A DNA stretch of 64,000 nucleotides from Mytilus californianus (taxonomy: Eukaryota), in contig NW_026262701.1 in assembly GCF_021869535.1 (NCBI RefSeq), forward strand, positions 101,122,001-101,186,000, given 5' to 3'. Position numbers and translations under genes: made by a program. Below the pieces are notes generated by a model. The model was not told where the DNA came from, did no database searches, and saw only the letters and a program-made list of their open reading frames with translations. Shown here piece by piece: positions 4,456 to 63,600 of the stretch (its first letter is position 1; each line of letters opens with the position of its first letter).

Positions 4456-5559
4456 CTTTATCTATTTGCCCTAAAATTACAAAAACAAAAAACAACTTGA
4501 AAACTTCATGCCAATAAGGGACCCAGTTGTACATTTTTGTGTAAAGCACAAAAACAAATACTTAATACTGATCCAAACAAAATAATAGTTATATATGAAC
4601 TCATCATAGATACAAGGATTGAAATTTTTTACGTCAGATATGTGTTTCATTCTACAAAAGACTCATCAGTGACGCTCGAATAAAAAAGTTATAAAGTACA
4701 AATTTACTAATTTGATTTTTAATAAAAAAAAAAATGTTTTCTTGACATGTACGTATTTCAAATACACATTTACATTGTAACTTAAATATCAAAGTATAAC
4801 ATATCATCAATAAATTACATGACATTGACTGGATAGGATCTAAATAATGACCACTTCACTGAACTATTTTGTTTGAACTATCAAAGGTAGTGATCAACCT
4901 TGGAAGAAAAAGATATCTAGTCAGTCCTACAGGGTTTTGATTGCATTTAGTGCAATCTTTACCCAAAAACTAATCTTATTCTAAATTTGATGTCATTTCT
5001 TTTTTACAAATTGAAAATATGTTTGAAAGGGCTGTGCTGTACCAAAACTATGTTGCTGGTAAAATTGCCAGACAGGTTTTTGCTGCCACTCTTTTAATTT
5101 CGGAGCTAAACTTGCAAATTCCATCAGGAGATTTTGTAGATAGTATTTGATAATGAATGATTGCTGCCATTTTGCTGGAGCTCATTCTTCAAGTCAAGGT
5201 ACTTTGTACAATTACAATAATGTAACAAAATACTCTTTTAAATACTTTTATTTATGAAAAATCTTCATCCTGGATTCATTTAGTCAATTATAAATCAAGG
5301 TGCAAGGTCACGCTTTTGATAAATTTTTTGTATAAAGATCATTTTCAAGATGCTGAACATTGAACACAACCTAGAAAATTACAAAACATATCTTTATCCT
5401 ATAACTTTTTTAAATGATTTCATGAAAAGTTGCCTACAAAATTATTACTCAATGAAGAAGCTATTTGTATGCAATTTACTAACAAAAAGTCCTTCAATAT
5501 CCAATTGACAATCACATGGAGTAGTCTGTCTTCACAAATCACGCTTTTTCATGCATACA

Positions 5560-5740: not shown

Positions 5741-6779
5741 ACAGCTACAACAGTCAGGGGAATTACTTAAATGACTGATTCAAGTAACATTTTGTGAAGA
5801 AATGTTACAAGAAAGAGTTGTCTTTCTTTAATAATCATCTTTTTAAGTACATTGTAGTACAAATAAATCACTAGACTAAGTGATTTAATTTTATTGTAGC
5901 TTTAAATATATAATATTAATGATCCTGGATTGCATCAAAGGTATAAACATCGCTACTTAAAAGAAGCAAAAGATCCATTTTTTAAAATTTTTACTATTAA
6001 TTATTTATAATCTAAACCTGTATATGTAAAATTTTAGTAAAGCTATAAAATAACTTATTCCAGTAATTCTCCCGACTGTACAAGGACACATTATTCAGAC
6101 ACTGAGATAACAGCCTTTGCTCAGACTCCAAAATCCTGCATACCTGATCTAACTCTTAAATGCTGCATTATAAGATAGGATATTTTTATTCCAATTAAAG
6201 GGCCAATGAAGAGCAAAGTAATTTAATACAATGACTTTTTGTAATTGACAGAAATAATTTTTACAATCATATAAAATATGAATATAATCAACTAAATTTT
6301 AAGATCTGTGGGCACAGCCAGGTCAGAGCCCTAAGCATATGTGTAAAAAACGAAGTAATAAAACAGATTATATATAATATTAACAGGCAAATATTCATAA
6401 TGGGTTACACATAAACCAAGAACTGACTTCATCCTCTTTCACAGGTACATTTTGTAACACCTGCCTCATGAGTCATATCTAAGATAATTCAGTAATCACC
6501 AGGTTGATGGAGTTTTCAAAGACGATGTTAAATTATTTTTAGTGATTGAGCCTTAACTATCTAAAAAAATTCACAAGAAAACAATTCTTCAAAAGATTTA
6601 CCATTGGAATCAATGGCTATTCATGCTATTGCAACTGATAAACTGTAAAACATTAAAAAGAAAGAGTGGAGGAATACATGTGCTTTCATTCAGTAACTAC
6701 ATTAAGGACAGAATTACATATATATGTTTAAGTGACTGAGTAACCTTTTCATGTGGCAAAGCCTATTCTGACAATCTGT

Positions 6780-9692: not shown

Positions 9693-34770
<25,078 letters not shown>

Positions 34771-44914: not shown

Positions 44915-45889
44915 TTAGCGACCAGCGGTAGCAGCAGCTGTAGCTGTGGACTGAGCTACTTGTGCTGCCTTTTGTTTCAACATTGTCCAGTCAAAAGTGT
45001 AATCGTACTGATAGTTCAGGGTACGGAATAGAATGCGGAAAAGTTGTCGTAAGTACATATAATCTGGAGCCTCTTCAAATCTCAATCCTCTACAGTAGTT
45101 TAGGTACATAGCAAATTCAGCTGGAAAACCTTTGCAAAGAACTTCTACTGGCGTTGACATCTTTTTCTCACTAATTTTCTCATATTTTTGCTTTTTGGTA
45201 TTAGCTTTCAAACCTTGCCACGGTAGACTGCCTCTGTTGAAATACATCAAAACATAGCCAAGCGACTCCATATCATCACGACGACTCTGCTCTATGCCAA
45301 GATGTGCATTGATGCTGGCATACCTGGCAGTTCCAGTTAGATTCTTATCTTCCCTATATGCAATGTGGGTTCTTGTGCGACTATCTCGGTACTTTTTGGC
45401 TAGCCCAAAGTCGATCAAGAAAACTTTGTTGCAGTGACGACCGATTCCCATCAAGAAATTATCAGGTTTAATGTCTCTGTGAATGAAATTTTTATTGTGG
45501 ACATACTCTATACGTCCTATCATTTGATCTGCAAGCATTAAAACGGTTTTCATAGTGAATCTGCGTGAACAGAAGTTGAACAGATCTTCTAAACTTGGCC
45601 CTAACAAGTCCATAACAAGGATATTGTATTCTTTCTCTTGACCATACCAGCGTATATGAGGAATACCCACTCCACCTTGAAGAATTTTATAAAGTTTACT
45701 TTCATAAAGAAGTTGTGGGTGTCTAGCTTTAACAGATTCCAATTTAACTGCTACTTCTTCTCCATTTGTTATGTTGATTCCGAGATAAATATCACCAAAC
45801 GACCCACTGCCTATTTTTCTCACCAGACGGTATTTTGACCCCACGAGGAACTCACTTTTTTGGGTTGAGCGATCACCGGCACTCTCCAT
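44915..45889 (-). CDS. CSNK1A1: Casein kinase I isoform alpha, single coding exon, 324 aa
   Basis: Uninterrupted ORF with [39 protein letters not shown] and SRRDDMES. The alpha-specific GIGRHCNK and LRFEEAPDY are present, and the C-terminal tail is short. Confidence 0.98.
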
Positions 45890-45959
45890 TGTCTATATAT
45901 CTTAGAAAGAGCGACTTAAATAGGTGAAAATGTTTATATTTTTTGTTTCTTTGTCAGGT

Positions 45960-48657: not shown

Positions 48658-51600
48658 ATGAAACGTCAGATAGCCATTCCGCGTCAAATGTCACTCATTA
48701 CACCAGAGATCTTAAACCCGTTTGTTCATAAAATTCATCTTAGTTTTATGCAAAAAATACAGGTAGGTAGATGTGAAAGACTTATAATGTACACTTCTCG
48801 ACACCATTAATAGTTCAATAGATATACTCACCATCAGTATACTCTCAGCATAGAAGAACAATATGTATATATATCCCCGGGGGGGGGGGGGGGGGGGGGG
48901 GGTTACTTCCTATATTTTTAGTAGAACGAGTGTGCCGCAAAACAGGGTCCCTTTTTCATGCCCTTGATCTTGATCTTGATAGGAATAAGGTGATACATCC
49001 ATGGATATTAATACACCGCGCGTGCGTCAAGTAATTTACTTAAGTGGGGCCCCCTTACAATTTCACTAAAGGTTTTAGCTGGTTCTTCTGCTGTCTGAAT
49101 TTTGATGAAGATATCCGGTGGTAGTTGGTTCCAGTCTTTAATGGTATTTGGAATGAAACTGTATTTTAATGTGTCTGTTTTTGTTTGAAGTCTAAGGAAA
49201 TGTTGGCTGTGCATGTTCTTGGTTGTCCTTGATGGTTTTTTCAGTTGGTCAGAAGGTAAGTTTGCTTGACCGTGTATACTTTTGCAGAAAAGGATCAGTC
49301 TGTTTTGTGTACGGCGGTCTTTTAGTGATGGTAATTGCAGTTGCTCTAAAATTGCTGTCATACTTCCTGGTTCGTAGTTGTAGTTTGATGTTATAAACCT
49401 AGCTGCTCTTTTCTGTACATTTTCCAGTTGGTCTTGTAGATATAGTTGATGTGGGTCCCAGGCAGTGCTTGCATAGTCTAGGACAGGTCGTATCAGTCCT
49501 TTATATGCCTGGAGTTTAATTTCAAGTGGACATGCTGATAGGTTTCTTTTTAGTAAGCCTAATGTCCTATAAGATTTATTGCATATCTCCTCTATGTGCT
49601 TTCCCCAGTGTAGATCATTTGTGATGTTTACTCCTAGATATTTAATAGATGTTAAAATTGGAGATCCGTATTTTTGAGAGTGTATTTAAATGATGTAATT
49701 TTCTTCTTGCGACTCAATGTCATCATGTTGCATTTAATTGGTTGAAATCTCATACCCCAATTAGTCGCCCAGTTACCAAGGGTATCTATATCTTTCTGTA
49801 GTTCTGCACAGTCATCCTCATTTTTAATTTCTCTGTAGCATATATACACAGTCGTCTGCGAACAGCCTTATTTCTGATGTTACATTTTCTGCTATGTCAT
49901 TGATATGGACCAGAAATAGGATGGGACCAAGAACCGTTCCTTGAGGTACACCTGATAGGACTGTCGATGTTTTGGACTTAGTCCCATTCACTATCACACA
50001 CTGAGATCTTGTAGATAGAAATGCATTAATCCAATTCAAGATGTTTTTCGGCACGCCATATTTGTGAAGTTTACTTTTTAATAGTTCGTGCGGTACGGTG
50101 TCAAATGCTTTTTCAAAATCCAAAATAAATATATCTGTTTGTTTCCTGTTGTCAATGGCAGTTGCCCAGTCATGTATTACGTTAATAAGTTGGGTTTCCC
50201 AGCTGTGTCTTCTTCTAAATGCATGTTGTCGGCTATTTAGGATGTTGTGATCTTCAAAGTGCTGCATTAGGTTCGAGCAAATGACATGTTCTAGTAGTTT
50301 GCAAGTGATACATGTTAGGGATACTGGTCTGTAATTACTTGGGATGGTTCTGTCGTTCTTCTTGAATAATGGGCATATATTAGCACTTTTCCATTCATCT
50401 GGGATGGTTCCTCTGTTGATGGATTGTTGGAAAAAGTGAGCCATTACCTCAGATATGTTAGGTGCCAATTCTTTAAGTACTCTGGGATGTATACCATCAG
50501 GGCCCATCGCTTTTGATGCATTTACATTTTTTAGTATCTTCTCCACTCCTTTGGTTGTTACTATGATGTTTCTCATTTTGTCTACATGAGGAGTTTGGTA
50601 TGGAATAGATTCATATACTGTCTCGGTATAAACGCTTGTAAACTGCGTATTCAATGCCTCTGCTTTCTGTTGGTCTGAATCAGCGGTCTTATTATCATGA
50701 GTCTTAAGTGGTGGTATTCCCTGTTTGTCTGCCTTCTGGTTGTTAATATATTTGCCCTGCTGGTTAGAACAGGGTCCCCTTTTCATGTCCTGCTGGTTAG
50801 AACAGGGTCGCTTTTTCATGCATTGCTGGTGAGAACAGGGTCTTTTTTAAACAAAGTATTTGTCTAGAACAGGATGGCTTATTTAACTGTTTAAGATACA
50901 GTCTAGAACCCCGGTCTAGAACAAGGTATACATTTTCTGAGCATTTCTAGAACAGGGTATACATTTTCTGAGCGTGTCCAGAACAGGGTATGTTTTTCAA
51001 TATTTCTGTTTAGATAAGGGTATGTTTTTATATGTTTTCTGGTTAGAACAGGGTATGATTTTCAATGTTTTCTGATTATAACAGGGTATGATTTGGCAAG
51101 TGCTGTTGCCAGTGTTGGCACAGTTATGCCCGAAAGGATAGTCAGTAACCCCCCTGGGATATATATATAGCTTCCTTTAGGGTGACAAGTTTTCTTGCAG
51201 ACTGGTACCTTATAACAGAATTATAGATATCTCGTACCATTGCAAACTACCAATCAACTCATACCACTAATAGTATTAGCAAACTCGTACCACGGTAAAT
51301 TTGTACCATTGCAAACTACCAATCAACTCATACCACTAATACATGTAGCAATAGCAAACTCGTACCACGGTAAATTTGTACCATTGCAAACTACCAATCA
51401 ACTCATACCACTAATAGTAATAGCAAACTCGTACCACGGTAAATTTGTACCATTGCAAACTCGTACCAACTTATGTAAATCTAATGCACTCAAATGGTGT
51501 TAATGTTGAAAATATATTTAAATTTAACTCATTAAATCAAAAGTCTGTAAAAAGTAATACATGTAGTATATAATTTGAAAGTCACGATGACCAGTTTGTA

Positions 51601-54600
51601 GCTGAGTGTTCCTAGGCTAATTGGATGAAAAAGAAGAAAGAGTAATTTTGTTTTTATATGTTTTTTGTGTTATGTCTAATTGTATCTTGACTAGCAGACA
51701 TGATAACGTAACATAGAATAGGTTTAATTTTGATGATTTATATGCCCCAATTTCATCAACATTCATGTATATATAATATCAACAAAATATCAAATATTAC
51801 TACATTTTTTTGTTATTCATGTTATTGTTAGACCAGTCAGGGGTACTACTCATACAAGTGATTTCAGAAATTCATGTTATTGTTAGACCAGTCAGGGGTA
51901 CTACTCATACAAGTGATTTCAGAATCACATCTTTAGGTGATTTTGGCTTTGAAAAATTGAAAATTTTCACAAAGTAGACACAGACTTTTTAAAATCACTG
52001 AAACAAGTAATTTGAGAAGTAAAAATGTAATCACTTCATTAAGTGTTTATAACATTTTCTTGATATTTTCCCCACAAGGCTCAAGCTTAATATTTTTTAT
52101 TGGTTTAAAGACAAGGATTGCATTTAAAAAACAAATACATACATGCAGAAATTATCTTTTGCTTGATGAGCCTGTCAGTTTTGACGGTTTATCTAAAATA
52201 TGCATAAACTGGAATAATTTGTAGATCAGGATATAACCTTGAAGTAGATCATTCTAACTCTAAAGAAGACAAATCAGGTTACTTAAAATTGTTGACCTTT
52301 GTTTGATTGTAAGAGTAGTTAATGAATATTTGATTACAGAAAAATTCCCAAGGGTACTTTTAAAAGCTTTAGCGCACTAACTTATTGCCCAAGTGCACTG
52401 GTGAAATTAATATACAAGAGAAAGGGATAACTGATCTATGTAGGAAAATTAAAGAAAAATTTGTCAAAATATGGAAAGTTAATGAATTAGCATTTGAAGA
52501 TCAGAGGAAACACCAAAATCACTTAAATCGGTGATAACTGAATTGATCAAATCACTGAAATAGGTGATCATGAAATCACTTATATAAGTAGTACCCCTGA
52601 CTGTAGACTGTGAATAGAAAGTAATGTAAAGATAACAAACAATTTAATTTTGTCTATGATCCCCTTATCACAGTCACTAAAACAGTCTAAAATTTAAACA
52701 AGCAGATAATTGTCTGCAGTTCCAATTGCCATTGCAATACAACAGACCTGATTGCTATTTGGGAATCGGTGACACTTGAGTTATTGATGACTTAACAACG
52801 AACACTTTACTTTTGTGGTATCAGACTATTTGTCTTGTGATGTCAAAATTTTACTGAAACTTCTGCGATGTCCATTAATGGCAGACAAATAGCGATAAGG
52901 TGTACATGTATGGATTTTGCCATCATGTACAGCAGATTTTGACCTGAGTCTCCTATACACTTTATTGCTATTTGTATAATAAAAATTTACAGATTAATGA
53001 TTTACATGTACTAGTCATGCTAGTAGTTGATTTCTTTAATTATATTGATTTTCTATTTTCTCTTTTAATGAGTACTTTGTCCACTAAACAACTGTGTTAG
53101 TTGTCTGGTGGTAGTGTGCTTGCCTTGATTGTATTTTGGAGGTTATATGTGTTTAATCTACCACAGTCATTGTCAAACCAAATATAAAAAAGAAGATGTG
53201 GTATGCTTGCCAATGAGACAACTCTCCACAAGAGAACAAATGACACAGAAATTAACAACTATAGGTCACCGTACGGCCTTCAACAATGAGCAAAGCCCAT
53301 ACCGCACAGTCAGCTATAAAAGGCACTTAAAGACTTAAAAATCAGTGGGAAAGGGCACATGGTGATTTTGATTTCCTCTGTATATTGTTTTACTATGATG
53401 CCCCACATTCAATAGTAGAGGTAATATGTTTTTCTGTCTGTGTTTCTGTTCCTTCATCTGTCCATCCTCTTATCAGGTTAAAGTTTTGATTAAAGCTAGT
53501 TTGCCATGAAGTTGTGGTCACCTCAACTTTGAATCTAAGTGCAATTGTTTACTAGGATGTGAATTAAAAAAAAGTATTTGTCCTTATTAGGGTTTTGACC
53601 CAGATTCTGTGGTTCACTGAACATGGAAATGTAATAGTGCCAGTTTGCATGATGTCCTTTGGACATATATTCTTCTTTTACTTTTGACGGGAATTATGCT
53701 TAGCAATTTTATAAGACTGATGTGTTTATTTTACAGATTGTCTTCATGTCTCTGTTTGTTGTACCAATTAGACTTTTAATGATCTTCACTTGTCTCATAT
53801 TCGCATGGATGTTAGCCAAAGCATCATTAGCATTCCGATCTAAGGAGGAGCAGGATAAACCAATGAAAGGATGGAGAAAGTATGTACAAATAGGAAAATT
53901 TCTTAGAAGTCCTCAGAAAGTAAAATTGTTGTACTGATTAATTAGTCTTAAAGACGATTAAAAGTGATGATAAATTTTGTAGAGCAATAAAAAAAATCTC
54001 TTGTTGGAAGTCATGCTTTAAAAGGTTGTAGTTTCAAAGAAATAAGGAAAAAATTAACTTAAGACCATTTAAAAAAACGGTACTTACCATTACTAAAGAA
54101 AATATAGTATAATTCACATTAACTAAGGGTATACATCACACATGGTTTGTAATAAAAGTTTATCCAATCAATAATGGGAGACTCCTCAATGATTAAATAA
54201 TTATTACATAATTATATTTGGCATTGACTTTTTATGAACAAATGCCTTTCTTTTTTGCAATTCAGTCTTCTGCTAAACAAGATATATTATCATTTGATTA
54301 TGAAATATATGACACACATGTGTACACTACATGTGCTTTCCATATGAAGGAAGGAACATGTGTTAAATCATGTGACCAAAGTATTGGAACAAATTTTTCA
54401 ACAAATGTTATGCAAGTGCAATTCAATGTTTTATATTTTTAGTAAAAAAAATTGTGTATAGCCACCAATGTTATTTAAGTCATCCACACATGATTCAAAT
54501 ATGATTTAAATTTGAGTTTTTCTATAAACACATATGGCCGTGTCACATATGGAGCACTTATTTGAGAAGTATGATATGCCAGTACAAATATAGCTGATAC

Positions 54601-57600
54601 TTAAGACAGAAGCACATATGGGTAATTTTACATTTGTGTAATGCTTAGTACTGACAGTAACATTAATGCTTCATGCATCAATAACATTAACTTCAAAGTT
54701 TTGTCATATAAAAGGTTCATTTGATTAGTTAAAATTTTACAAAAATGGAAGGACGTACAAAAAGGTAATTGATTTTAGTACCAGCATGCACACGAATGAA
54801 TTCAATTGAAATATTTGTGACAATAAGTCATTTTGTTCTGCACATACTTTTTACAACAGTGGTTTAAAAATAAGTTTGAAATAATGATTTTAGTTGTAAC
54901 TTTTTTCTTGTAATAATCAGTACAGCTTGTTATATCACTGTGTATTGGGAAATCTTAGCATGTGTCTAATTTTCGGAGTAGACATTTTACGGCGAATTTT
55001 CCCTATAAGAGCATTTGACCGTTCATTTAAATGCATTATACAAAGCCATGAAACTTGAATAATGACCACTGTGAAGATTTTACTGTCCAATCAAAGGCTC
55101 AAACTGCAAACAAAGCCTAATGGAAAAATAGCCTGATAAACAGTTTAGAAAAAGAATAAATGTACAAATTGTTTATAAACTGACTAATTCATAAGTTGTG
55201 GTAGGCCACACCAAATTAATGTCTTGTTCTTCGAATCGCTGCTTCAAATTTCCTGATTTCATTTTTTCTTTTTTTCTTTTGCTGGGAATTTTTTTTTCAG
55301 AATTCAGATTTCAGATTTTTAAGTTACTGCATATAAATTCTACTCCCAATACTGAGTTGTATCAACAATGTGGATTTTGTTGGTCAAAATGCGAAAGTGC
55401 AAAGGCCAAATGCTATACTTTGTCAGAGTAAGGATACAATATTGATGTCTGTTTTGTTGAAAAAAGTTAGGGGAAACTACAACACATTTTTGAATGTTGA
55501 GATTCAAAGTTCATTGTCAAACGGGAAATGGGGAAATGGAGTTTTCATAGGATGTCAAGTAATTGCCTGATTCAGTAAACAATATTGTTTTATTTTGAAC
55601 TGATTTGAAATCTTCCCTTTTTAATCATAGACTCAAAACACAAAAGCTGTGATATCAATAACATATAAATATTGACTACATTCACTGCAACACACAAATA
55701 AAAACTCTAAAATTTAAGTGATACTAGTATAAAGATACCTGCGAATTTTGTAATGCTACTTATATTGTAACTTTCACTTCAATGACAGACACATAAAAAT
55801 TGGTATCGCTTCATACATGTCATAAAAAAATCCCCCCCTATTTTCATCTGAAAAATCGGAAGAACAATTATGTTTTTTGGTGTGGCCTTATTGGATGTTT
55901 TAGAGTGATCAATTTGGATTTTTTGCACCTAATAGTTTGATGGAATGTTAATTTTAAATTGTATATTTCAATTGTAATTTAGCATGATGTTCTGAGTTTG
56001 TTTGCAGTACTGCTTCTGTTCACTGTAGTGTCATGAATGTACTTTATAAGAAAAAAAAAACAAATGCTCATATGCATATCTTGTATACGTAAATGTTTAA
56101 AATTCTTTTCCTGGATAATTTTCTATATGAAGGAAAACATAGGAATTAAACAAACTAGAAATAAATCTGTGAAAAAAATGCTCAAAAATGTTTAAACCTT
56201 CCACTCATTTGCCAAATGACAAAGTGCACTAGATTTATTGCTTTGAGATAAGAGTAAGTCAGTTACTTGTGTAAAGCAGATGCTTTACAATGATAAAAAA
56301 GAATAACAAAGAAAAGAAAAATAATGTATATTACTAGTTAGATAAAACTAACTCAATATATGCCCAAAGGCTTTTCGTAAATAAGCAGAAAAAAATACAC
56401 ACAAAAATATGAATATTACATGAGTGTACTGGAAGCTCACTGTGAAAACACAGTATTTTCAGGGTTGTTACACAGAAAAACCAAAAAAATAAAATCCCGC
56501 CCAACAAAATCCTAGAATTAATAGGGTAGAAACCCTGAATATAATTACATGTATTTCTTTTTTTTTCTTAACATAAATTCTATTAATATGATTACCACCT
56601 CGGTGGTCTTGTAGCGTGCTTGCCAGTTGCCTCCAGCGGGGAGATAGTGGGTTCAATATCTAGCTAGGTGAAAAACTTTAAAATTGATGTTTGCTGCTTC
56701 TCTGTTATAAAGCACATGGTATTAAGGAGTAACAGCAAGAAGACTGGTCTGTTCAAGTTAGAATAAAGTATCTGGGTAGGGTGACATGTCTTCCTATTGA
56801 CTGTTACCTTGTGAACTAGCGCACCTAGTCGACTTGTGCAAAGCAGGTTTCATATTCACATCACATTAACATGTTCTTGGTCTGAATATGCATTTTTGAA
56901 ATTTGCCACTGGACCTAATCAGTAACCCATCCATCATCAGGAATAACAAGATTTACAGGATTCATAGTTAATTTACTTGATTAGATTTTACACATCATAA
57001 CATGTTCTATCATTATCATAGTCATATTGTATATATAACATATTTAATGTCATCTAATTCTAGCATGCTACGACCAGTAATTGTTTTGTTTTGCCAAGGC
57101 GTGTTTTTGATGGGAGGATTTTGGATAACAGTGAAAGGAAAGCTGGCCAGCTGCAAGGAGGGACCAATAATTGCTTTAGCACCTCATTCATCGTATTTTG
57201 ATAGTCTTGTCATCGTATATCTAAACCTGTCAACTATTGTTGTTAAATCATCCACTGAATTCATTCCTATATTTGGAAGTAAGATAATTGTTTAGTTCCT
57301 ATATTTTGAAGTAAGATAATCGTTTAGAAACTTTTTTCTTAGGGAAATTAAAAGACTTATTTTCTCATCCTGTTGAACTTGAAATTGACCTGGCATGTTT
57401 GGTGCTCTTTTGTAGTAAATTTTCTATGGTTATTCAAAGGTCGAAATAGATACCTATATATATTTAATGTTGTGTAAGAAAAATATATTTATTAACAAAT
57501 TCTTTAATGAGCAATTTTGTTTTCTGGTTTGCTTAATATCATGGCTTTATTTCATTCAAGCCTTGTTTCTTTTATGATACAAATAGACCATGCTGCTGTT

Positions 57601-60600
57601 CAGCTTTGCCTCAGTCTGTTGCTTTTACTAAATATGACCAATATTTGGAATTTAATAATCAGTATTCATGCTATTAACAATCAAAATTTATTCATTGCCA
57701 TGATTAACTAATGTTTTGGAATATAAATTAGAATTGATATTAGTTTGATACTCTGTAGTAAACAATCCTTTATAGATACCTGCATGTAATGATCTTATAT
57801 AGCTTTTTGTATGTCTCTCCTTGCAGAATGCTGATTGGATAACTTTAAATGTTGTCATAATAATGGGGTATGGTCGTTCATGCTTTCATCATAGCATTTA
57901 TCATTTATCACGCATGTTTCATTTTTAATATGCTTGCAAAACAGCAGCTTTCACAAACGACTAGAATTAGATTGAAATATGTCACAATTTAAAGTATTTA
58001 TCTTCACATGTGATTACAGCTGTGATTTGAATCGTACTTTTTATAATGCATGTTTATTGTTATTTAAGGACGTTATTCCACAAAACTATCATGTATCTAG
58101 GAAGGGCCATTTGCTTTTTCTATGGATTCCAAAATGTAAAAGTTAAAGGCCAACCAGTAGGATCCGATGTAGCACCAATGTTGGTCTGTGCACCACATTC
58201 CACGTTCATGGATGCTTTTGTTATATTTTACTGTTCCACACTTCCTAGCAGTCTCTCTAGGAAAGAAAATTCAGCTTTACCAATTTTGGGATGTAGGTAT
58301 ATCGTGCATCACATCATATATGAATTGTTGGAATTCCCTTATGGTAATATTAACAGTGTAATGTCTGATTTTAACATATTCAGAAAGTTCGTACCAATTT
58401 TTATATATCTAATCTCTTAAACGTTTGTATTAATAAACATGTTTTTGAGTACCAGATTTAAAAGACATTATAAGGCATATGGCACCATTGTTTATCTATA
58501 AGTACATCAGATTTAGTTTTACTTCTTGTCTTGTTTTCCTGATTTGGTCTTAATCTTCTTCAGTGATTACCTAGCCAATTTTTACCTAATGAACTTGTTG
58601 ATTAAACTTTTACTGATGTCCTCTGGACCAGCCAACATGACCCCTTTGACTGAGAAGAATAATATAGTCAATAATCAAACAAAATTATTGTCAAGGAGAG
58701 AAATGTTTTTCCAGTCAATAGCTGATTGTACTGTTTTTTTGAAAGTGTATGATTAAATTTCATGTGAGGATTTCAGGCCCACATCTGTTTAGATACAATT
58801 ACTGAGTATAGTATCATGATGTTTTACTGATTATAGTATCAGTCATATATTTGCTGTTTTAATTCATTTGTGATGATAGGCTAATATATTTCATATAGTT
58901 AAAAAAGATGTGTTAAATAACAAATTATTTATTAAACTAACTCTTGGAAACTGTTAGTTTTAGATTTGACATACACTCTTTGAACAGAATGACATAGGGA
59001 AATGGAATCTAATGGTCTGACAGATTGATACTGTGAACATTTTGGATACCTTTTTTGTGTAAAAATTTTGAAATAATTTTACATTTTTTTAAGGCATTAA
59101 GGCCTTTTCCATTAGTGATTGTCAGTGTATACTACAGTGACTTAATACAGAATTTGATTTAAAGTCTTAAGTACCATTTTTCACTTTTTGTGTTATTAAT
59201 TCTAATGAGAGGATGCATGTTAACCAGGACTGCATCACATTTCACTGATTACAGTTCCCATGACCTATATGTTTTATGCATGTCACTGATTACAGTTCCC
59301 GTGATCTATATGTTTTATGCATGTCACTGATGAGTGAATGGATAAGTTTGTGTTTAGTTGAAATCAGTCAACACATGATTCTTGTGCAAACAGTAGACCA
59401 CAAGAAGCAATATTAGAATATTGGTTATGTTTGTTCTTGTCAGAACCTTTGTACTATATCTTATATTTTATTGGAAATAATTAGTTAACTTTTTAACTAG
59501 TGCGTTAAGATATCTCAGAGTATCCTTCCAATTTTGAACTGATATTATAAAGCAACTTCTGTTCGAAACTAGTTCTAACAACAGAAAGTTTATCATAAAG
59601 TACGCTTTTACAAATGAATGATCATTTGTTGGTCACAAATTCAAATTTCAACATTTATGTAAATGGTTGTGTGTTAGTCACAAATTCATATTTCCACATC
59701 CACTTTAATATCCATATGTAGGTCACAAATTCATATTTCCATGTCCACGTAAATAGCCATGTGTCAGTCACAAATTCATATTTCTATCTCCACGTAAATA
59801 GCCATGTGTCAGTCACAAATTTATAGTTTCACATCCACGTAAATAAATATCCATGTGTCAGTCGCAATTTATATTTTCACATCCACGTAAATATCCATGT
59901 GTCATCCAAAAATTCATATTTCCACATCCACATGAATATCCATGTGTTAGTCGTGAAATTCATATTTCCACATCCACATAAATTGCCGTGTCAGTCACAA
60001 ATTCATATTTCTACATCCACGTAAATAGCAGCTGTAAATAGCCATGGGTCAGTCACAAATTCATATTTCCACATCCATGTAAATAGCCATGTGTCAGTTA
60101 CAAATTCATAATTCCATGTCCACGTAAATAGCCATGTGTCAGTCACAAATTCATATTTCCACATCCACGGAAATTTCCATGTTAGTCACAAATTCATATT
60201 TCTACATCTACGCAAGTAGCCATGTGACAGTCACACATTCATATTTCCACATCCACTTAAATAGCCATGTGTCAGTCACAAATTCATATTTCCACATCCA
60301 CGGAAATTGCCATGTTAGTCACAAATTCATATTTCTACATCTACGCAAGTAGCCATGTGACAGTCACACATTCATATTTCCACATCCACTTAAATAGCCA
60401 TGTGTCAGTCACAAATTCATATTTCCACATATAGGTCATTAGCCATGTGTTAGTCACATATTCATATTTCCACATCCACGTAAACAGCCATGTGTCAATC
60501 ACTAATTCATATTCCCTGATTCATGTAAATAACCATGTGTCTTTGACAAATTCCTGTTAATATGCAGCAGTTTTCCTATATCCAATTTTTCCATTTTCAT

Positions 60601-63600
60601 CGTGTAATCATTATAAAGTGAAAGTCTTCAGAGAACACCAGAATTATCAATAAAAAGGAGCTTTTATTAAGTGCTAGTTGTATTATGATTTGAGTTTTAA
60701 ATGGCTTTCATGTGCTGTGGGTATTTTGTTGGTTTTAACAATGCATGTTTATGTTTAGTTTGGTTTACCTGTATGTGTAGTAACCTATTAAGTTTGATAA
60801 CTGGATGAATTGCCTGTTTCATAATTTCAGCATTTCTTACCTGTAAATAACTGCATTGATTTTACTTAATAATCAACAGTATTATTTGTAAATGTAAGCC
60901 TAACTTTACAAAATATTGAATTCTAATATTGACTTACTTTAAATTTCAATATCAACCTGAATATGTTAGATTATTTTCAAAGTGACAGTAGACAGCTATC
61001 AATCAATCAATCAATTTTCAATATTTGTAGTTTTAAAACATTTCACTAAAACAATATGATTATCAAATATGTTTGATCAGATCAATTTAAACAACAAATG
61101 TACTGTGGATTTATTTATTTTCATGGGTACCAATTTTCGTGATTGAAGAAATATTGTTTTTGTTGAATCTTGATTTTGTGGATTTGCCAAAGATTAATTC
61201 ATACTTCAAGTTACTTTGCATCTACCTACGAAATCCACAATAATTGGTATCCAAAGAATAATTATGAATCCACAGTAATTTGTATTTATTCTCAGGATTC
61301 TGTATTCAGAATGTTGTGCTTTTCAGCTCTTATAGAATATACTCAGCCATTATATGTGCAACGAGAAGATCCCAATTCCAGAAAAAATATAATGAAAGAA
61401 ATGACTAGAAGAGCCAAGACTATGGGAGAATGGCCTCAAATTATTATTTTTCCTGAAGGAACATGTACTAATAGATCATGTTTAATAGGCTTCAAACAAG
61501 GTAAACATCCTCATTAGGTCAAATGCAATAAAAAAATCTTTGCTTCAATATAAAAAAATGATGGTTTGTACTCTGTCCTCCATCTTAAGTTACGGTGTAA
61601 GGTGTCTTTTAGCATTGAACGACAGGAATCTAATTCTCCAAATTATAGATAAAACAAATATTCAGGGTAAACCTTCATGAAACAACATCAGACAAGGGTC
61701 AAACAAAGAAAATGTGATCATAATACTTAAGTGTCAAGTTTCAGTATAACACAATAACATTAATGATACCAATTTTTCTGCACCAGATGCACATTTCAAT
61801 AATAAATGTCTCTTCAATGATGCTTGAGGCCTTGTATTAGATTGGAATATAAAAATTATTCTTCATTCTTAACTGATGATAACAGTTAATAACAATAATA
61901 TTCTTTATTCAGAAAGCAATGCAGCTTCTAGATAACAAAAAATATCACAGTAAGCATCACATAGTACAATTTACTAATTGATTTATACAATTTATTACAA
62001 TTTCAGAGCTTTATAAATTAAACATATTCAAGAGTTTTCAAATATTTTAATAGCAGTGTATAGATACTATCCAATATTATTTTCAAAAGTTCTTTTATAT
62101 TTTGAACATATATATCAATTGTAAATATTTTAAATGCGGATAGATTCCTTGAGTTATAAGGTTTGAAATAAATCGTGCAAACATCTTTATATTTCTTCAT
62201 TCCAAAAATGAGAATGATATTCATTCTCTATAAAATTACAGTCACACATATTAAATAATCTACGCATGTCCGTTTATATTAAAATATATTTTGGTTTAAA
62301 TGTTCAAGTTATGTGCATGTAAACAATATTTTTAACCACAGATTATATATTTCAGTCAATTATGTCATTTTAAAAGTAGATGTAAATCAGTTAAATTTAG
62401 ATGTATTTAGAAGTTTATATTTCAGGAAGACTTAAAATACAAATATGAATACTATTAAGAAGGATTATTTTGTGATTCATCATAGAATTGAATGTTGCTT
62501 TTCCAAAACTCATATGAAAGGAAAGCAAATGATCATCAAGTTTTATTTTTGCAAAACCTATCCTGTCCCAATTTTCAAAATAACAAAAACATCACAAAAT
62601 ATTTTGAATTTAGATAATTATTGACCACTGTTATACTTTTTTGCAGGTGCTTTTTATCCTGGAGTGCCTGTTCAACCAGTTTGTATAAGATACCTTAATA
62701 GTTTGGTAAGTAGTAATTCTAGAACTATAGACCCATCAAGGATATGTTTATATTATTATACCCCCTCTTTCTAAAGTGGCAGTATTTAGTGATGGGGGGA
62801 GTCAGTCTATACATTCATTGATCAGTCTGTCAGTTTGTTCTTCTGTCCTCCTTTGTATCTACAACAGCTCCTGACTGGCTGGACAGAATGTATTGTTTCT
62901 TTATCTGAATGATATATGGGGTTTACTTTGGGATAATATGGACGTAGTGATATCTGCACCCTATTAGAAATAAGGAGATGTGGTATGATTGCCAATGAGA
63001 CAGCTATCCACCAAAGTTCAAATGAAGTGGATGTAAGCAATTATAGGCAACCAAACAGCCTTCAACAATGAGAAAAACCCATACCCTATAGTCAGCTATA
63101 AAAGGCCCCGACATGAAAAATATGAAACATTTCAATCGAGAAAACTAACGGCCTAATTTATAACAAAACAATTTAAGAAAACAAATATGACAGACATGAA
63201 TCAACAACGACCACTAAACTACAGGCTCCTGACTTGGGACAGGCACACAAAGAATACGGCGGGGTTAAACATGTTTGTGAGTGCTCAACCCTCCCCTAAC
63301 CTGGGACAGTGGTGTTACAGCACAACACAAGAACCAAACTATAAAAATCAGTTGAAAAGGGCTCAACTAATCAGAATGATACAAAGCAGAAAAACATTGT
63401 TCACATTTAGGATCCGCAACTTCTCCTTAAACCCTTATTACAATTTATTGAAACTAAGACATCTACTGATGAGCTTTGGTAAACTTTGAACAGGCTAAAA
63501 CATGTGATGGGGTTAATACTAGAATTTTAAGCACTCAACCCTTACTTTTTTAATATAATATTTTTTTTTATAATAGGATACATATACATGGACCTGGGAA

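What the first reader, a model, noticed from the sequence alone, without database searches (positions are those of the whole stretch)
57064..58292. Predicted mutually exclusive exons swap the catalytic HxxxxD exon of LPCAT
Seen in sequence: two homologous exons (3a 215 nt, 3b 224 nt) lie in tandem between exon 2 and exon 4. Both are stop-free, enter in phase 2, leave in phase 1, and carry a full acyltransferase motif I (APHSSYFD versus APHSTFMD). Both lengths are 2 mod 3, so including both or neither shifts the frame; either one alone gives a continuous ORF. The 790-nt spacer is too long for steric exclusion, so NMD or RNA-structure control is implied. Established: the HxxxxD motif is the catalytic centre of AGPAT-family acyltransferases. 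Inference: one gene makes two enzymes with different active-site and substrate-entry regions, possibly switched by tissue or temperature (membrane remodelling, PAF synthesis). The two exons are highly diverged yet both intact, which argues for old, selected duplication.
Basis: partly seen in the sequence, partly recalled or inferred. Interest (0 to 1): 0.93.

Follow-up and report, generated by a model that had tools for sequence, protein, structure and literature searches.

The report
Ancient alternative catalytic exons in LPCAT
A mussel phospholipid-remodelling enzyme gene (LPCAT) carries two tandem versions of the exon that holds its catalytic HxxxxD motif and uses one or the other; the pair is real and already in RefSeq isoform models, it dates back to early bilaterian animals, and its two versions resemble vertebrate LPCAT1 and LPCAT2/LPCAT4.

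Summary
Exons 3a (57064-57278, 215 nt) and 3b (58069-58292, 224 nt) are homologous, have the same phases, and each carries HxxxxD. Either one alone keeps the reading frame; both together or neither gives stop codons.

The gene is the Mytilus LPCAT1/2-type gene. The window's two splice products match the N-terminal 212 and 215 residues of M. californianus RefSeq isoforms X2 (3a) and X1 (3b), so the isoforms are already annotated, in five Mytilus species.

Both exons are under purifying selection (dN/dS about 0.1). In the oyster orthologue, RNA-derived contigs join exon 2 to A to exon 4, or exon 2 to B to exon 4.

The A/B pair, in that order, also occurs in gastropods, insects, a priapulid and a sea star. 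An acorn worm has three copies; a coral and amphioxus have one. An AU test rejects a duplication within molluscs (p = 0.001). The A clade (support 98/90) includes vertebrate LPCAT1, while LPCAT2 and LPCAT4 are B-like.

I found no paper describing this. The scan had noted this same stretch once before (s1-302497), not other DNA.

The parts
48658..48762 (+). LPCAT exon 1 coding part: ATG to donor CAG|gtaggt, 35 codons, includes the NPFVH motif
   Evidence: Identical to the N-terminus of P0337 and P0278.
53737..53879 (+). Exon 2, 143 nt. Encodes the hydrophobic N-terminal segment and ends after 2 nt of a codon.
   Evidence: 100% match to the Mytilus LPCAT proteins.
57064..57278 (+). Exon 3a, the A type (LPCAT1-like): 215 nt, motif I APHSSYFD, followed by ...STIVVKSS...IPIFG
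   Evidence: Present in RefSeq isoform X2, P0337. dN/dS 0.11. Lies in the A clade with 98/90 support. RNA runs hold about the exon-only share of words.
57296..57327 (+). Tandem duplication of about 31 nt covering the 3' end of exon 3a and its donor. It creates a second GTAAGA donor, between 57310 and 57311. It is absent from M. edulis and from L002. Using that donor would run into an in-frame stop.
   Evidence: three-way comparison; sequence.
57591..57694 (+). Intron block nearly identical between the window and M. edulis (1 mismatch in 104 nt), which is better conserved than synonymous sites of the exons. Candidate splicing-regulatory element.
57792..57859 (+). Intron block of 68 nt, identical between the window and M. 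edulis. Candidate regulatory element.
   Evidence: Its pairing with 54701-54821 is not above background.
58016..58068 (+). The 53 nt upstream of the 3b acceptor (branch point and polypyrimidine region), identical in M. edulis
58069..58292 (+). Exon 3b, the B type (LPCAT2/4-like, the form found in cnidarians): 224 nt, motif I APHSTFMD, followed by ...LPSSLSRKEN...PILG
   Evidence: Present in RefSeq isoform X1, P0278. dN/dS 0.09. Groups with the bivalve B exons at 99/88.
58099..58101 (+). Internal AG acceptor inside 3b (tatctag|G). One M. coruscus gene model uses it to join 3a to a 192-nt remainder of 3b in frame, giving a 564-aa protein with two HxxxxD motifs.
   Evidence: P0172 sequence, read against the sequence.
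61327..61500 (+). Exon 4, 174 nt: motif II region and motif III (FPEGTCTN). Constitutive.
   Evidence: Pfam PF01553 at 26.2 bits.

Best explanation
The window holds the 5' part (exons 1 to 4) of the single Mytilus LPCAT1/2-type lysophospholipid acyltransferase gene. Exons 3a and 3b are a tandemly duplicated, mutually exclusive pair. Each encodes the stretch from just after the N-terminal membrane segment, through catalytic motif I (HxxxxD), to the start of motif II.

Shown:
- Either exon alone gives an intact enzyme of 500 or 503 aa, with an acyltransferase domain and EF-hands.
- Including both exons or neither shifts the frame into early stop codons. Only single-exon mRNAs can therefore encode the enzyme.
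- The pair is at least as old as protostomes and probably as old as bilaterians, always in the order A then B. Each type keeps its own signature: A has HSSYFD...S(V/I)VAK.E; B has HS(S/T)F(F/M)D...LPS.VSR.EN.

Inferred:
- Double-inclusion and double-skip mRNAs are removed by nonsense-mediated decay.
- The choice between 3a and 3b is set by trans-acting splicing factors acting on the unusually conserved inter-exon intron, not by steric or U2/U12 incompatibility.
- The two isoforms differ in acyl-donor or lysolipid preference or in regulation, as LPCAT1 differs from LPCAT2 and LPCAT4. In vertebrates the two exon types were sorted into separate paralogues: A into LPCAT1, B into LPCAT2 and LPCAT4.
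For: - Frames and splice sites.
- Homology of the pair.
- Match to the first 212/215 residues of RefSeq isoforms X2 and X1 of M. californianus; the same isoform pair in five Mytilus species.
- Both full-length isoforms pass the Pfam PF01553 cut-off (63.5 and 53.2 bits against 23) and carry EF-hands.
- Purifying selection on both exons (dN/dS 0.11 and 0.09 at dS about 0.2), with splice sites kept in a related mussel.
- RNA runs hold the 3a +/-100 nt stretch at a word share of 0.32-0.44, which is the exon-only fraction. Comparing the two searches suggests that some runs hold mostly 3a and others mostly 3b.
- Oyster orthologue: Logan RNA contigs join exon 2 to A to exon 4 (L014, L015) or exon 2 to B to exon 4 (L011, L012). 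Both oyster exons are 218 nt.
- A/B isoform pairs in RefSeq for about ten other molluscs and for Lingula; gene models of insects, a tick and a barnacle contain A then B in tandem.
- Genomic tandem copies in Acanthaster, Saccoglossus (three copies) and Priapulus, with the same phases; a single copy in a coral and in amphioxus.
- Trees: A clade at 98/90, including vertebrate LPCAT1. A duplication within molluscs is rejected, p-AU 0.001. With exon 3 removed, the rest of the protein gives a separate protostome group (85/94, not starred) that excludes LPCAT1, and places LPCAT2 with LPCAT4.
- Type-specific consensus.
- Motif I is essential in LPCAT1 (H135A and the Asp mutant are inactive); LPCAT1, LPCAT2 and LPCAT4 have different preferences: review PMC4280512.
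Against:
- The RefSeq isoforms are automated models, and I could not see the evidence behind them.
- One M. coruscus model (P0172, 564 aa) joins 3a to most of 3b in frame through an internal acceptor. RefSeq also lists 413- and 417-aa isoforms that start inside 3b or 3a. These could come from double-inclusion or alternative-5' transcripts.
- An AU test does not reject a tree in which all vertebrate LPCAT1/2/4 segments form one clade (p = 0.17; only 73 columns). The LPCAT1 = A assignment rests on branch support and on the signature.
- The insect B exons sit next to the A clade with weak support.
- No functional difference between the isoforms has been measured anywhere that I could find.
Confidence: 0.87

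Rival explanations
1. One of the two exons is an unused or decaying duplicate (a pseudo-exon), and the gene makes only one enzyme.
For: No junction reads could be laid in this species. 3b alone does not reach any Pfam threshold, and 3a alone scores only 14.7 bits.
Against: Both exons have dN/dS of about 0.1 and intact splice sites in two mussel lineages. Both appear in RefSeq isoforms of five Mytilus species. Both forms exist as spliced RNA contigs in oyster. Each type is conserved across phyla. Both full-length isoforms pass PF01553.
Confidence: 0.03
2. The two exons are commonly included together through the internal acceptor at 58100/58101, giving a protein with two tandem HxxxxD segments. 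The 'exclusive' pattern would then be an annotation artefact.
For: The M. coruscus model P0172 (564 aa) has exactly this structure. Many ab initio models in insects, a tick and a barnacle also contain both segments.
Against: None of the RefSeq isoforms of Mytilus retrieved has it. Every oyster RNA contig examined carries one exon only. The tandem models are mostly unreviewed 'hypothetical protein' predictions. The internal acceptor follows a purine-rich tract, so it looks weak.
Confidence: 0.04
3. The A/B pairs arose independently in several lineages by repeated tandem exon duplication, and the resemblance of A to LPCAT1 is convergent.
For: Saccoglossus has three copies, so further duplication does occur. 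The tree has only 73 columns. The AU test cannot reject vertebrate monophyly (p = 0.17). The insect B exons are placed oddly.
Against: The A clade joins arthropod, priapulid, lophotrochozoan and LPCAT1 segments at 98/90. Forcing all mollusc A and B segments together costs 59 lnL units, p-AU 0.001. The order (A then B) and the intron phases are the same in all phyla examined. The multi-residue signatures are shared.
Confidence: 0.08
4. The exons are truly alternative, but the isoforms are functionally equivalent and the choice is noise.
For: No biochemical comparison exists. The catalytic His and Asp are present in both.
Against: Two distinct conserved signatures have been kept since before the protostome lineages split. 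The inter-exon intron is highly conserved. The vertebrate paralogues that carry the A or B type have different documented preferences (PMC4280512).
Confidence: 0.08

Closest known systems
[quoted passage not shown]
   Same: Adjacent homologous exons of nearly equal length and identical phase. One is used per mRNA. The event is ancient, both copies are under purifying selection, and the isoforms differ only in a homologous segment.
   Different: LPCAT does not appear in the main text of PMC4494069 or PMC4417111, the two surveys I searched for it, and no paper links LPCAT with mutually exclusive or homologous exons. Here the swapped segment carries the catalytic motif itself.
'Splice isoform separation' after gene duplication (CALU and MARVELD3 in Abascal et al. 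2015, PMC4494069)
   Same: An ancestral gene has two alternative homologous exons. After duplication, each paralogue keeps a different one. Here LPCAT1 carries the A signature and LPCAT2 and LPCAT4 the B signature.
   Different: The separation would date to the vertebrate stem and involve three paralogues. Support comes from a tree of a 73-column segment. I did not check whether the vertebrate genes retain relics of the other exon.
Vertebrate LPCAT1 (AGPAT9), LPCAT2 (AGPAT11) and LPCAT4 (AGPAT7/LPEAT2); Drosophila LPCAT CG32699
   Same: Same family. PF01553 domain with HxxxxD and PEGTCTN motifs, plus C-terminal EF-hands. The fly has one orthologue for LPCAT1 and LPCAT2 (PMC4293825), as the mussel appears to.
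   Different: Mammals supply the two catalytic-core types from separate genes. The mussel supplies them from one gene by exon choice.
Docking-site/selector RNA pairing that controls exon clusters (Dscam, 14-3-3xi, MRP1; from my own knowledge of that literature)
   Same: A cluster of alternative homologous exons with conserved intronic blocks between them.
   Different: I found no complementary intron pair above background. With two exons whose lengths are 2 mod 3, frame and NMD already suffice to enforce exclusivity.

Membership tests
Mutually exclusive homologous exon pair | Two adjacent exons in the same gene that are homologous to each other | tested here: met
   About 30% identity over 59 aa; tblastn E = 5e-6 in the window; z = 8.3 against shuffles.
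Mutually exclusive homologous exon pair | Same entry and exit phase, similar length, and usable splice sites on both | tested here: met
   215 and 224 nt. Both enter after 2 nt of a codon and leave 1 nt. Both have AG acceptors with pyrimidine tracts and GT donors.
Mutually exclusive homologous exon pair | Mature mRNAs contain exactly one of the two exons | tested here: inconclusive
   In this species there are only annotated isoforms (X1 with 3b, X2 with 3a) and word shares of RNA runs. In the oyster orthologue the feature is met by spliced RNA contigs.
Mutually exclusive homologous exon pair | Including both exons or neither is non-productive | tested here: met
   Both cases shift the frame and give early stops. 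Exception: the internal acceptor at 58100/58101 would restore the frame.
AGPAT/LPLAT acyltransferases, LPCAT1/2/4 subfamily | PF01553 acyltransferase domain with motif I (HxxxxD) and motif III (PEGT-C) | tested here: met
   HSSYFD in 3a, HSTFMD in 3b, FPEGTCTN in exon 4. PF01553 scores 63.5 bits (A isoform) and 53.2 bits (B isoform) against a cut-off of 23.
AGPAT/LPLAT acyltransferases, LPCAT1/2/4 subfamily | C-terminal EF-hand pair (LPCAT1 and LPCAT2) | tested here: met
   EF-hand_7 at 59 bits in P0337 and P0278. This region lies outside the window.
AGPAT/LPLAT acyltransferases, LPCAT1/2/4 subfamily | Lysophospholipid acyltransferase or lyso-PAF acetyltransferase activity | not testable with these tools
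   Activity is shown only for mammalian enzymes and for fly CG32699 (PMC4280512, PMC4293825).
RNA-structure-controlled exon cluster (docking/selector) | Conserved complementary intronic elements that pair one at a time | tested here: not met
   The best duplex, 57769-57858 with 54701-54821, is -48.7 kcal/mol. The best of 77 background intron windows is -48.1. There is no long exact complement. Only two mussel lineages were available, so covariation could not be tested.
Splice isoform separation into paralogues | The alternative exon pair predates the gene duplication, and each paralogue retains a different type | tested here: inconclusive
   The LPCAT1 segment lies inside the A clade (98/90), and LPCAT2 and LPCAT4 lie outside it with the B signature. 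The AU test does not reject vertebrate monophyly (p = 0.17). Vertebrate introns were not searched for relic exons.

The most novel reading that the evidence does not exclude
The bilaterian ancestor already had one LPCAT gene with two alternative catalytic-core exons: A, a derived copy lying upstream, and B, the form found in cnidarians. Most invertebrates still use the gene this way. In vertebrates the two types were sorted into separate genes, A into LPCAT1 and B into LPCAT2 and LPCAT4. If so, the roughly 72-residue segment around HxxxxD would be a naturally defined module likely to underlie the functional differences between LPCAT1 and LPCAT2/4.
Probability: 0.55. Interest if true: 0.65.

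Novelty: new member of a known kind. Interest (0 to 1): 0.52.

Why it matters
Lipid biochemists treat invertebrate LPCAT as a single orthologue of mammalian LPCAT1 and LPCAT2. The evidence here indicates that the single gene supplies two catalytic cores by exon choice, and that the two cores carry the signatures that separate LPCAT1 from LPCAT2 and LPCAT4.

This gives a naturally delimited swap of about 72 residues for asking what sets acyl-CoA and lysolipid preference in this family. It also gives a concrete candidate for regulated membrane remodelling in animals, such as mussels and oysters, that face large changes in temperature and oxygen. And it adds a clear, very old case to the small set of alternative homologous exons that later became separate paralogues.

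The basic event is already present in automated annotation, so what is new is the interpretation and the evolutionary depth, not the existence of the isoforms.

Tried and rejected
1. Junction counting with read laying.

2. A third homologous exon in the window. None found. The weak hit at 30713-30844 contains a stop and is noise.

3. Steric or U12-type exclusion. The spacer is 790 nt and all splice sites are ordinary GT-AG.

4. Docking/selector RNA pairing. The best duplex is no better than background introns, and there is no long exact complement (one search timed out).

5. Searching with the 3a peptide alone found only two genomic read-through fragments, P0001 and P0002. These were useful for conservation but not for splicing.

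6. Solved structures. Only the EF-hand region matches by sequence; there was no acyltransferase-domain template. I did not pursue structure prediction because coordinates cannot be inspected with these tools.

7. AU test of vertebrate monophyly. Not rejected, so the LPCAT1 = A claim is kept as probable rather than shown.

8. Literature. Searches for LPCAT or CG32699 with 'mutually exclusive' or 'homologous exons' returned nothing relevant. LPCAT is absent from the main text of the two surveys I searched for it, PMC4494069 and PMC4417111.

9. Genomic loci for Branchiostoma isoform X2 and for Lingula were not on record.


Full report
**Observation**

- Exon 3a runs 57064-57278 (215 nt), with acceptor ttctag|C and donor A|gtaaga.
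- Exon 3b runs 58069-58292 (224 nt), with acceptor tttaag|G and donor T|gtaggt. The spacer between them is 790 nt.
- I rebuilt the neighbouring exons: exon 1 coding part 48658-48762, exon 2 53737-53879, exon 4 61327-61500.
- Exon 2 ends after two bases of a codon. Both alternative exons are open in the matching frame and hand one base to exon 4.
- Joining e1-e2-3a-e4 or e1-e2-3b-e4 gives continuous ORFs. Joining both exons or neither gives early stops.
- 3a encodes APHSSYFD and 3b encodes APHSTFMD.
- The peptides are about 30% identical over 59 residues, 8.3 SD above shuffles, with tblastn E = 5e-6 within the window. No third copy exists in the 64 kb.

**What the gene is**

The window is AT-rich eukaryotic DNA, and the sequencing runs that hold the stretch are from molluscs.

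A search of protein representatives with exon 4, followed by two searches with full-length relatives, identified the gene as the mussel LPCAT1/2-type lysophosphatidylcholine acyltransferase.
- The 212 residues of the 3a product match the start of M. californianus isoform X2 (XP_052062195.1, 500 aa) and of M. coruscus CAC5357373.
- The 215 residues of the 3b product match the start of M. californianus isoform X1 (XP_052062194.1, 503 aa). M. coruscus differs there by one residue.
- The same X1/X2-type pair is annotated in M. edulis, M. galloprovincialis and M. trossulus.
- Both full-length isoforms pass the Pfam acyltransferase threshold (63.5 and 53.2 bits against a cut-off of 23) and carry EF-hands.

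So the event is not merely predicted. It is already in public automated annotation.

**Are both exons used, and one at a time?**

From then on I sent none of those letters to any search tool and masked them in scripts.

Indirect evidence in Mytilus:
- RNA runs hold the 415-nt stretch made of 3a plus 100 nt on each side at word shares of 0.32-0.44. That is about the exon-only fraction.
- Comparing this search with the first one suggests that some runs (X15-X17) hold mostly 3a, while others (X2-X4) are not among the listed 3a holders yet hold a quarter of the 1.5-kb stretch.

Direct evidence comes from the oyster orthologue. In the Magallana gigas locus the order is exon 2, A (4608-4825), B (5851-6068), exon 4, with both alternative exons 218 nt long.
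- Logan RNA contigs L014 and L015 join exon 2 to A to exon 4.
- Contigs L011 and L012 join exon 2 to B to exon 4.
- The B protein is on record on 34 contigs and the A protein on 13.

**Selection**

A related mussel's genomic contig (L002/L003) carries both exons with intact splice sites. dN/dS is 0.11 for 3a and 0.09 for 3b, at dS of about 0.2. The exons are 94% identical at the DNA level, against 76-83% for the flanking introns.

Against M. edulis (L009), the inter-exon intron stands out.
- 57591-57694 has one mismatch in 104 nt.
- 57792-57859 and the 53 nt before 3b are identical.
- Other introns of the gene are only 70-77% identical.

This points to regulatory elements in that intron.

**Age of the pair**

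RefSeq or other annotation carries an A isoform and a B isoform for Biomphalaria, Pomacea, Gigantopelta, Haliotis, Ruditapes, Dreissena, Mya, Mizuhopecten, Saccostrea, Crassostrea, Octopus and the brachiopod Lingula.

Uncurated gene models of cockroaches, a termite, an ant, a beetle, a butterfly, a thrips, an aphid, a tick and a barnacle contain an A segment followed by a B segment.

In genomic loci I found tandem homologous exons with the same phases in three more animals:
- the sea star Acanthaster (12073-12288 and 15178-15399 of L004);
- the priapulid Priapulus (11062-11274 is A-like, 12497-12715 is B-like);
- the acorn worm Saccoglossus, with three copies.

A coral and one amphioxus locus have a single copy, which is B-like.

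A maximum-likelihood tree of 83 exon-3 segments gives an A clade with 98/90 support. It unites the arthropod, priapulid, mollusc, brachiopod, annelid and nemertean A exons with vertebrate LPCAT1 from mouse, cat and hagfish. Cnidarian, amphioxus, mollusc B, LPCAT2 and LPCAT4 segments lie outside it.

Two constraint tests were run.
- Forcing all mollusc A and B segments into one clade is rejected (p-AU 0.001).
- Forcing all vertebrate segments into one clade is not rejected (p = 0.17).

With exon 3 removed, the rest of the protein gives a protostome group (85/94, not starred) that excludes LPCAT1, and places LPCAT2 with LPCAT4 at 89/92. That is the incongruence expected if an ancestral A/B pair was sorted into paralogues.

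The consensus signatures agree with this.
- A: HSSYFDALP...(S/T)SVVAK.E.
- B: HS(S/T)F(F/M)D...LPS.VSR.EN.
- Mouse LPCAT1 reads ...SSIVMKAES.
- LPCAT2 reads ...PSMVSRNEN and LPCAT4 reads ...PKVVSRAEN.

**How it most likely works**

Shown: the frame rule means that only single-exon mRNAs encode the enzyme.

Inferred: mRNAs with both exons or neither are NMD substrates. The choice between exons is made by trans-acting factors on the conserved intron.

Steric hindrance is excluded by the 790-nt spacer, and U12-type incompatibility by the ordinary GT-AG sites.

The best duplex among conserved blocks, 57769-57858 with 54701-54821, is -48.7 kcal/mol. That is no better than the best of 77 background intron windows (-48.1), and there is no long exact complement.

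The functional difference between the isoforms is an inference from three points:
- motif I is essential in LPCAT1;
- the paralogues that carry the A or B signatures have different preferences (LPCAT1: saturated acyl-CoA. LPCAT2: inducible PAF synthesis. LPCAT4/LPEAT2: LPE with oleoyl-CoA; review PMC4280512);
- the two signatures have been kept apart since before the protostome lineages split.

**Complications**

- One M. coruscus model (P0172, 564 aa) joins 3a to a 192-nt remainder of 3b through an internal AG at 58099-58100, in frame, giving two HxxxxD motifs.
- RefSeq also lists 413-aa isoforms that start at a Met inside 3b (four species) and a 417-aa isoform that starts at the first codon of 3a. 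These may reflect double-inclusion or alternative-5' transcripts. I could not see the underlying mRNAs.
- The window has a species-specific tandem duplication of about 31 nt covering the 3a donor (57296-57327). It is absent from M. edulis and creates a decoy donor that would run into a stop.

**Comparison with what is known, and novelty**

The kind of event is well known: mutually exclusive tandem-duplicated exons, and their separation into paralogues (PMC9741552, PMC4494069). I found no paper that mentions it for LPCAT. The fly literature treats CG32699 as one orthologue of LPCAT1 and LPCAT2 without mentioning isoforms.

I therefore rate it as a new member of a known kind. It is real, ordinary in mechanism and already annotated. 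Its evolutionary depth and its likely correspondence to the vertebrate paralogues appear undescribed and are directly testable.

Noticed in passing
window 44918-45892 (- strand); L010 1-703: A protein kinase exon of 325 codons (Pkinase, 96.7 bits) lies head-to-head upstream of LPCAT. A Pkinase gene sits in the same position and orientation next to the oyster LPCAT, so the neighbourhood looks conserved among bivalves.
   Followed up: partly
window 49011-50846 (- strand): Long open frames of a retroelement lie inside LPCAT intron 1. The 49827-50846 frame matches reverse transcriptase RVT_1 at 98.8 bits.
   Followed up: partly
window 9693-9890 and 23042-23203 (+ strand): Two exon-like open frames match dihydrouridine synthase (Pfam Dus; 17.2 bits, below the cut-off, and 40.8 bits). 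A Dus-type gene probably occupies the first half of the window.
   Followed up: partly
window 57296-57327: A tandem duplication of about 31 nt covers the end of exon 3a and its 5' splice site. It is present in the window but absent from M. edulis and from the L002 mussel. It creates a second GTAAGA donor 32 nt downstream that would lead into a stop codon.
   Followed up: partly
window 59300-60870: The intron between 3b and exon 4 contains a long internally repetitive, satellite-like stretch. It aligns to the M. edulis intron at many offsets and gives repeated short open frames on both strands.
   Followed up: no
L007 8323-8526, 9098-9319, 11458-11676: The acorn worm Saccoglossus has three tandem homologous copies of this exon, all with matching phases and GT donors. 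Only the middle one is in the annotated protein.
   Followed up: partly
P0274, P0004 and P0275 (Amphibalanus amphitrite): Barnacle models contain two to four exon-3-like segments, and a second 'uncharacterized LOC122390822' gene has 3a-like and 3b-like parts. This suggests additional tandem gene or exon copies in barnacles.
   Followed up: no
They lie in intron 2, outside every feature described here, and I left them out of all later searches.
   Followed up: no
L001 799-1011: A 1.2-kb contig from JGI metagenome 3300045951 carries an A-type exon that is nearly identical in protein sequence to the oyster A exon. It is probably oyster-relative DNA in an environmental sample.
   Followed up: partly
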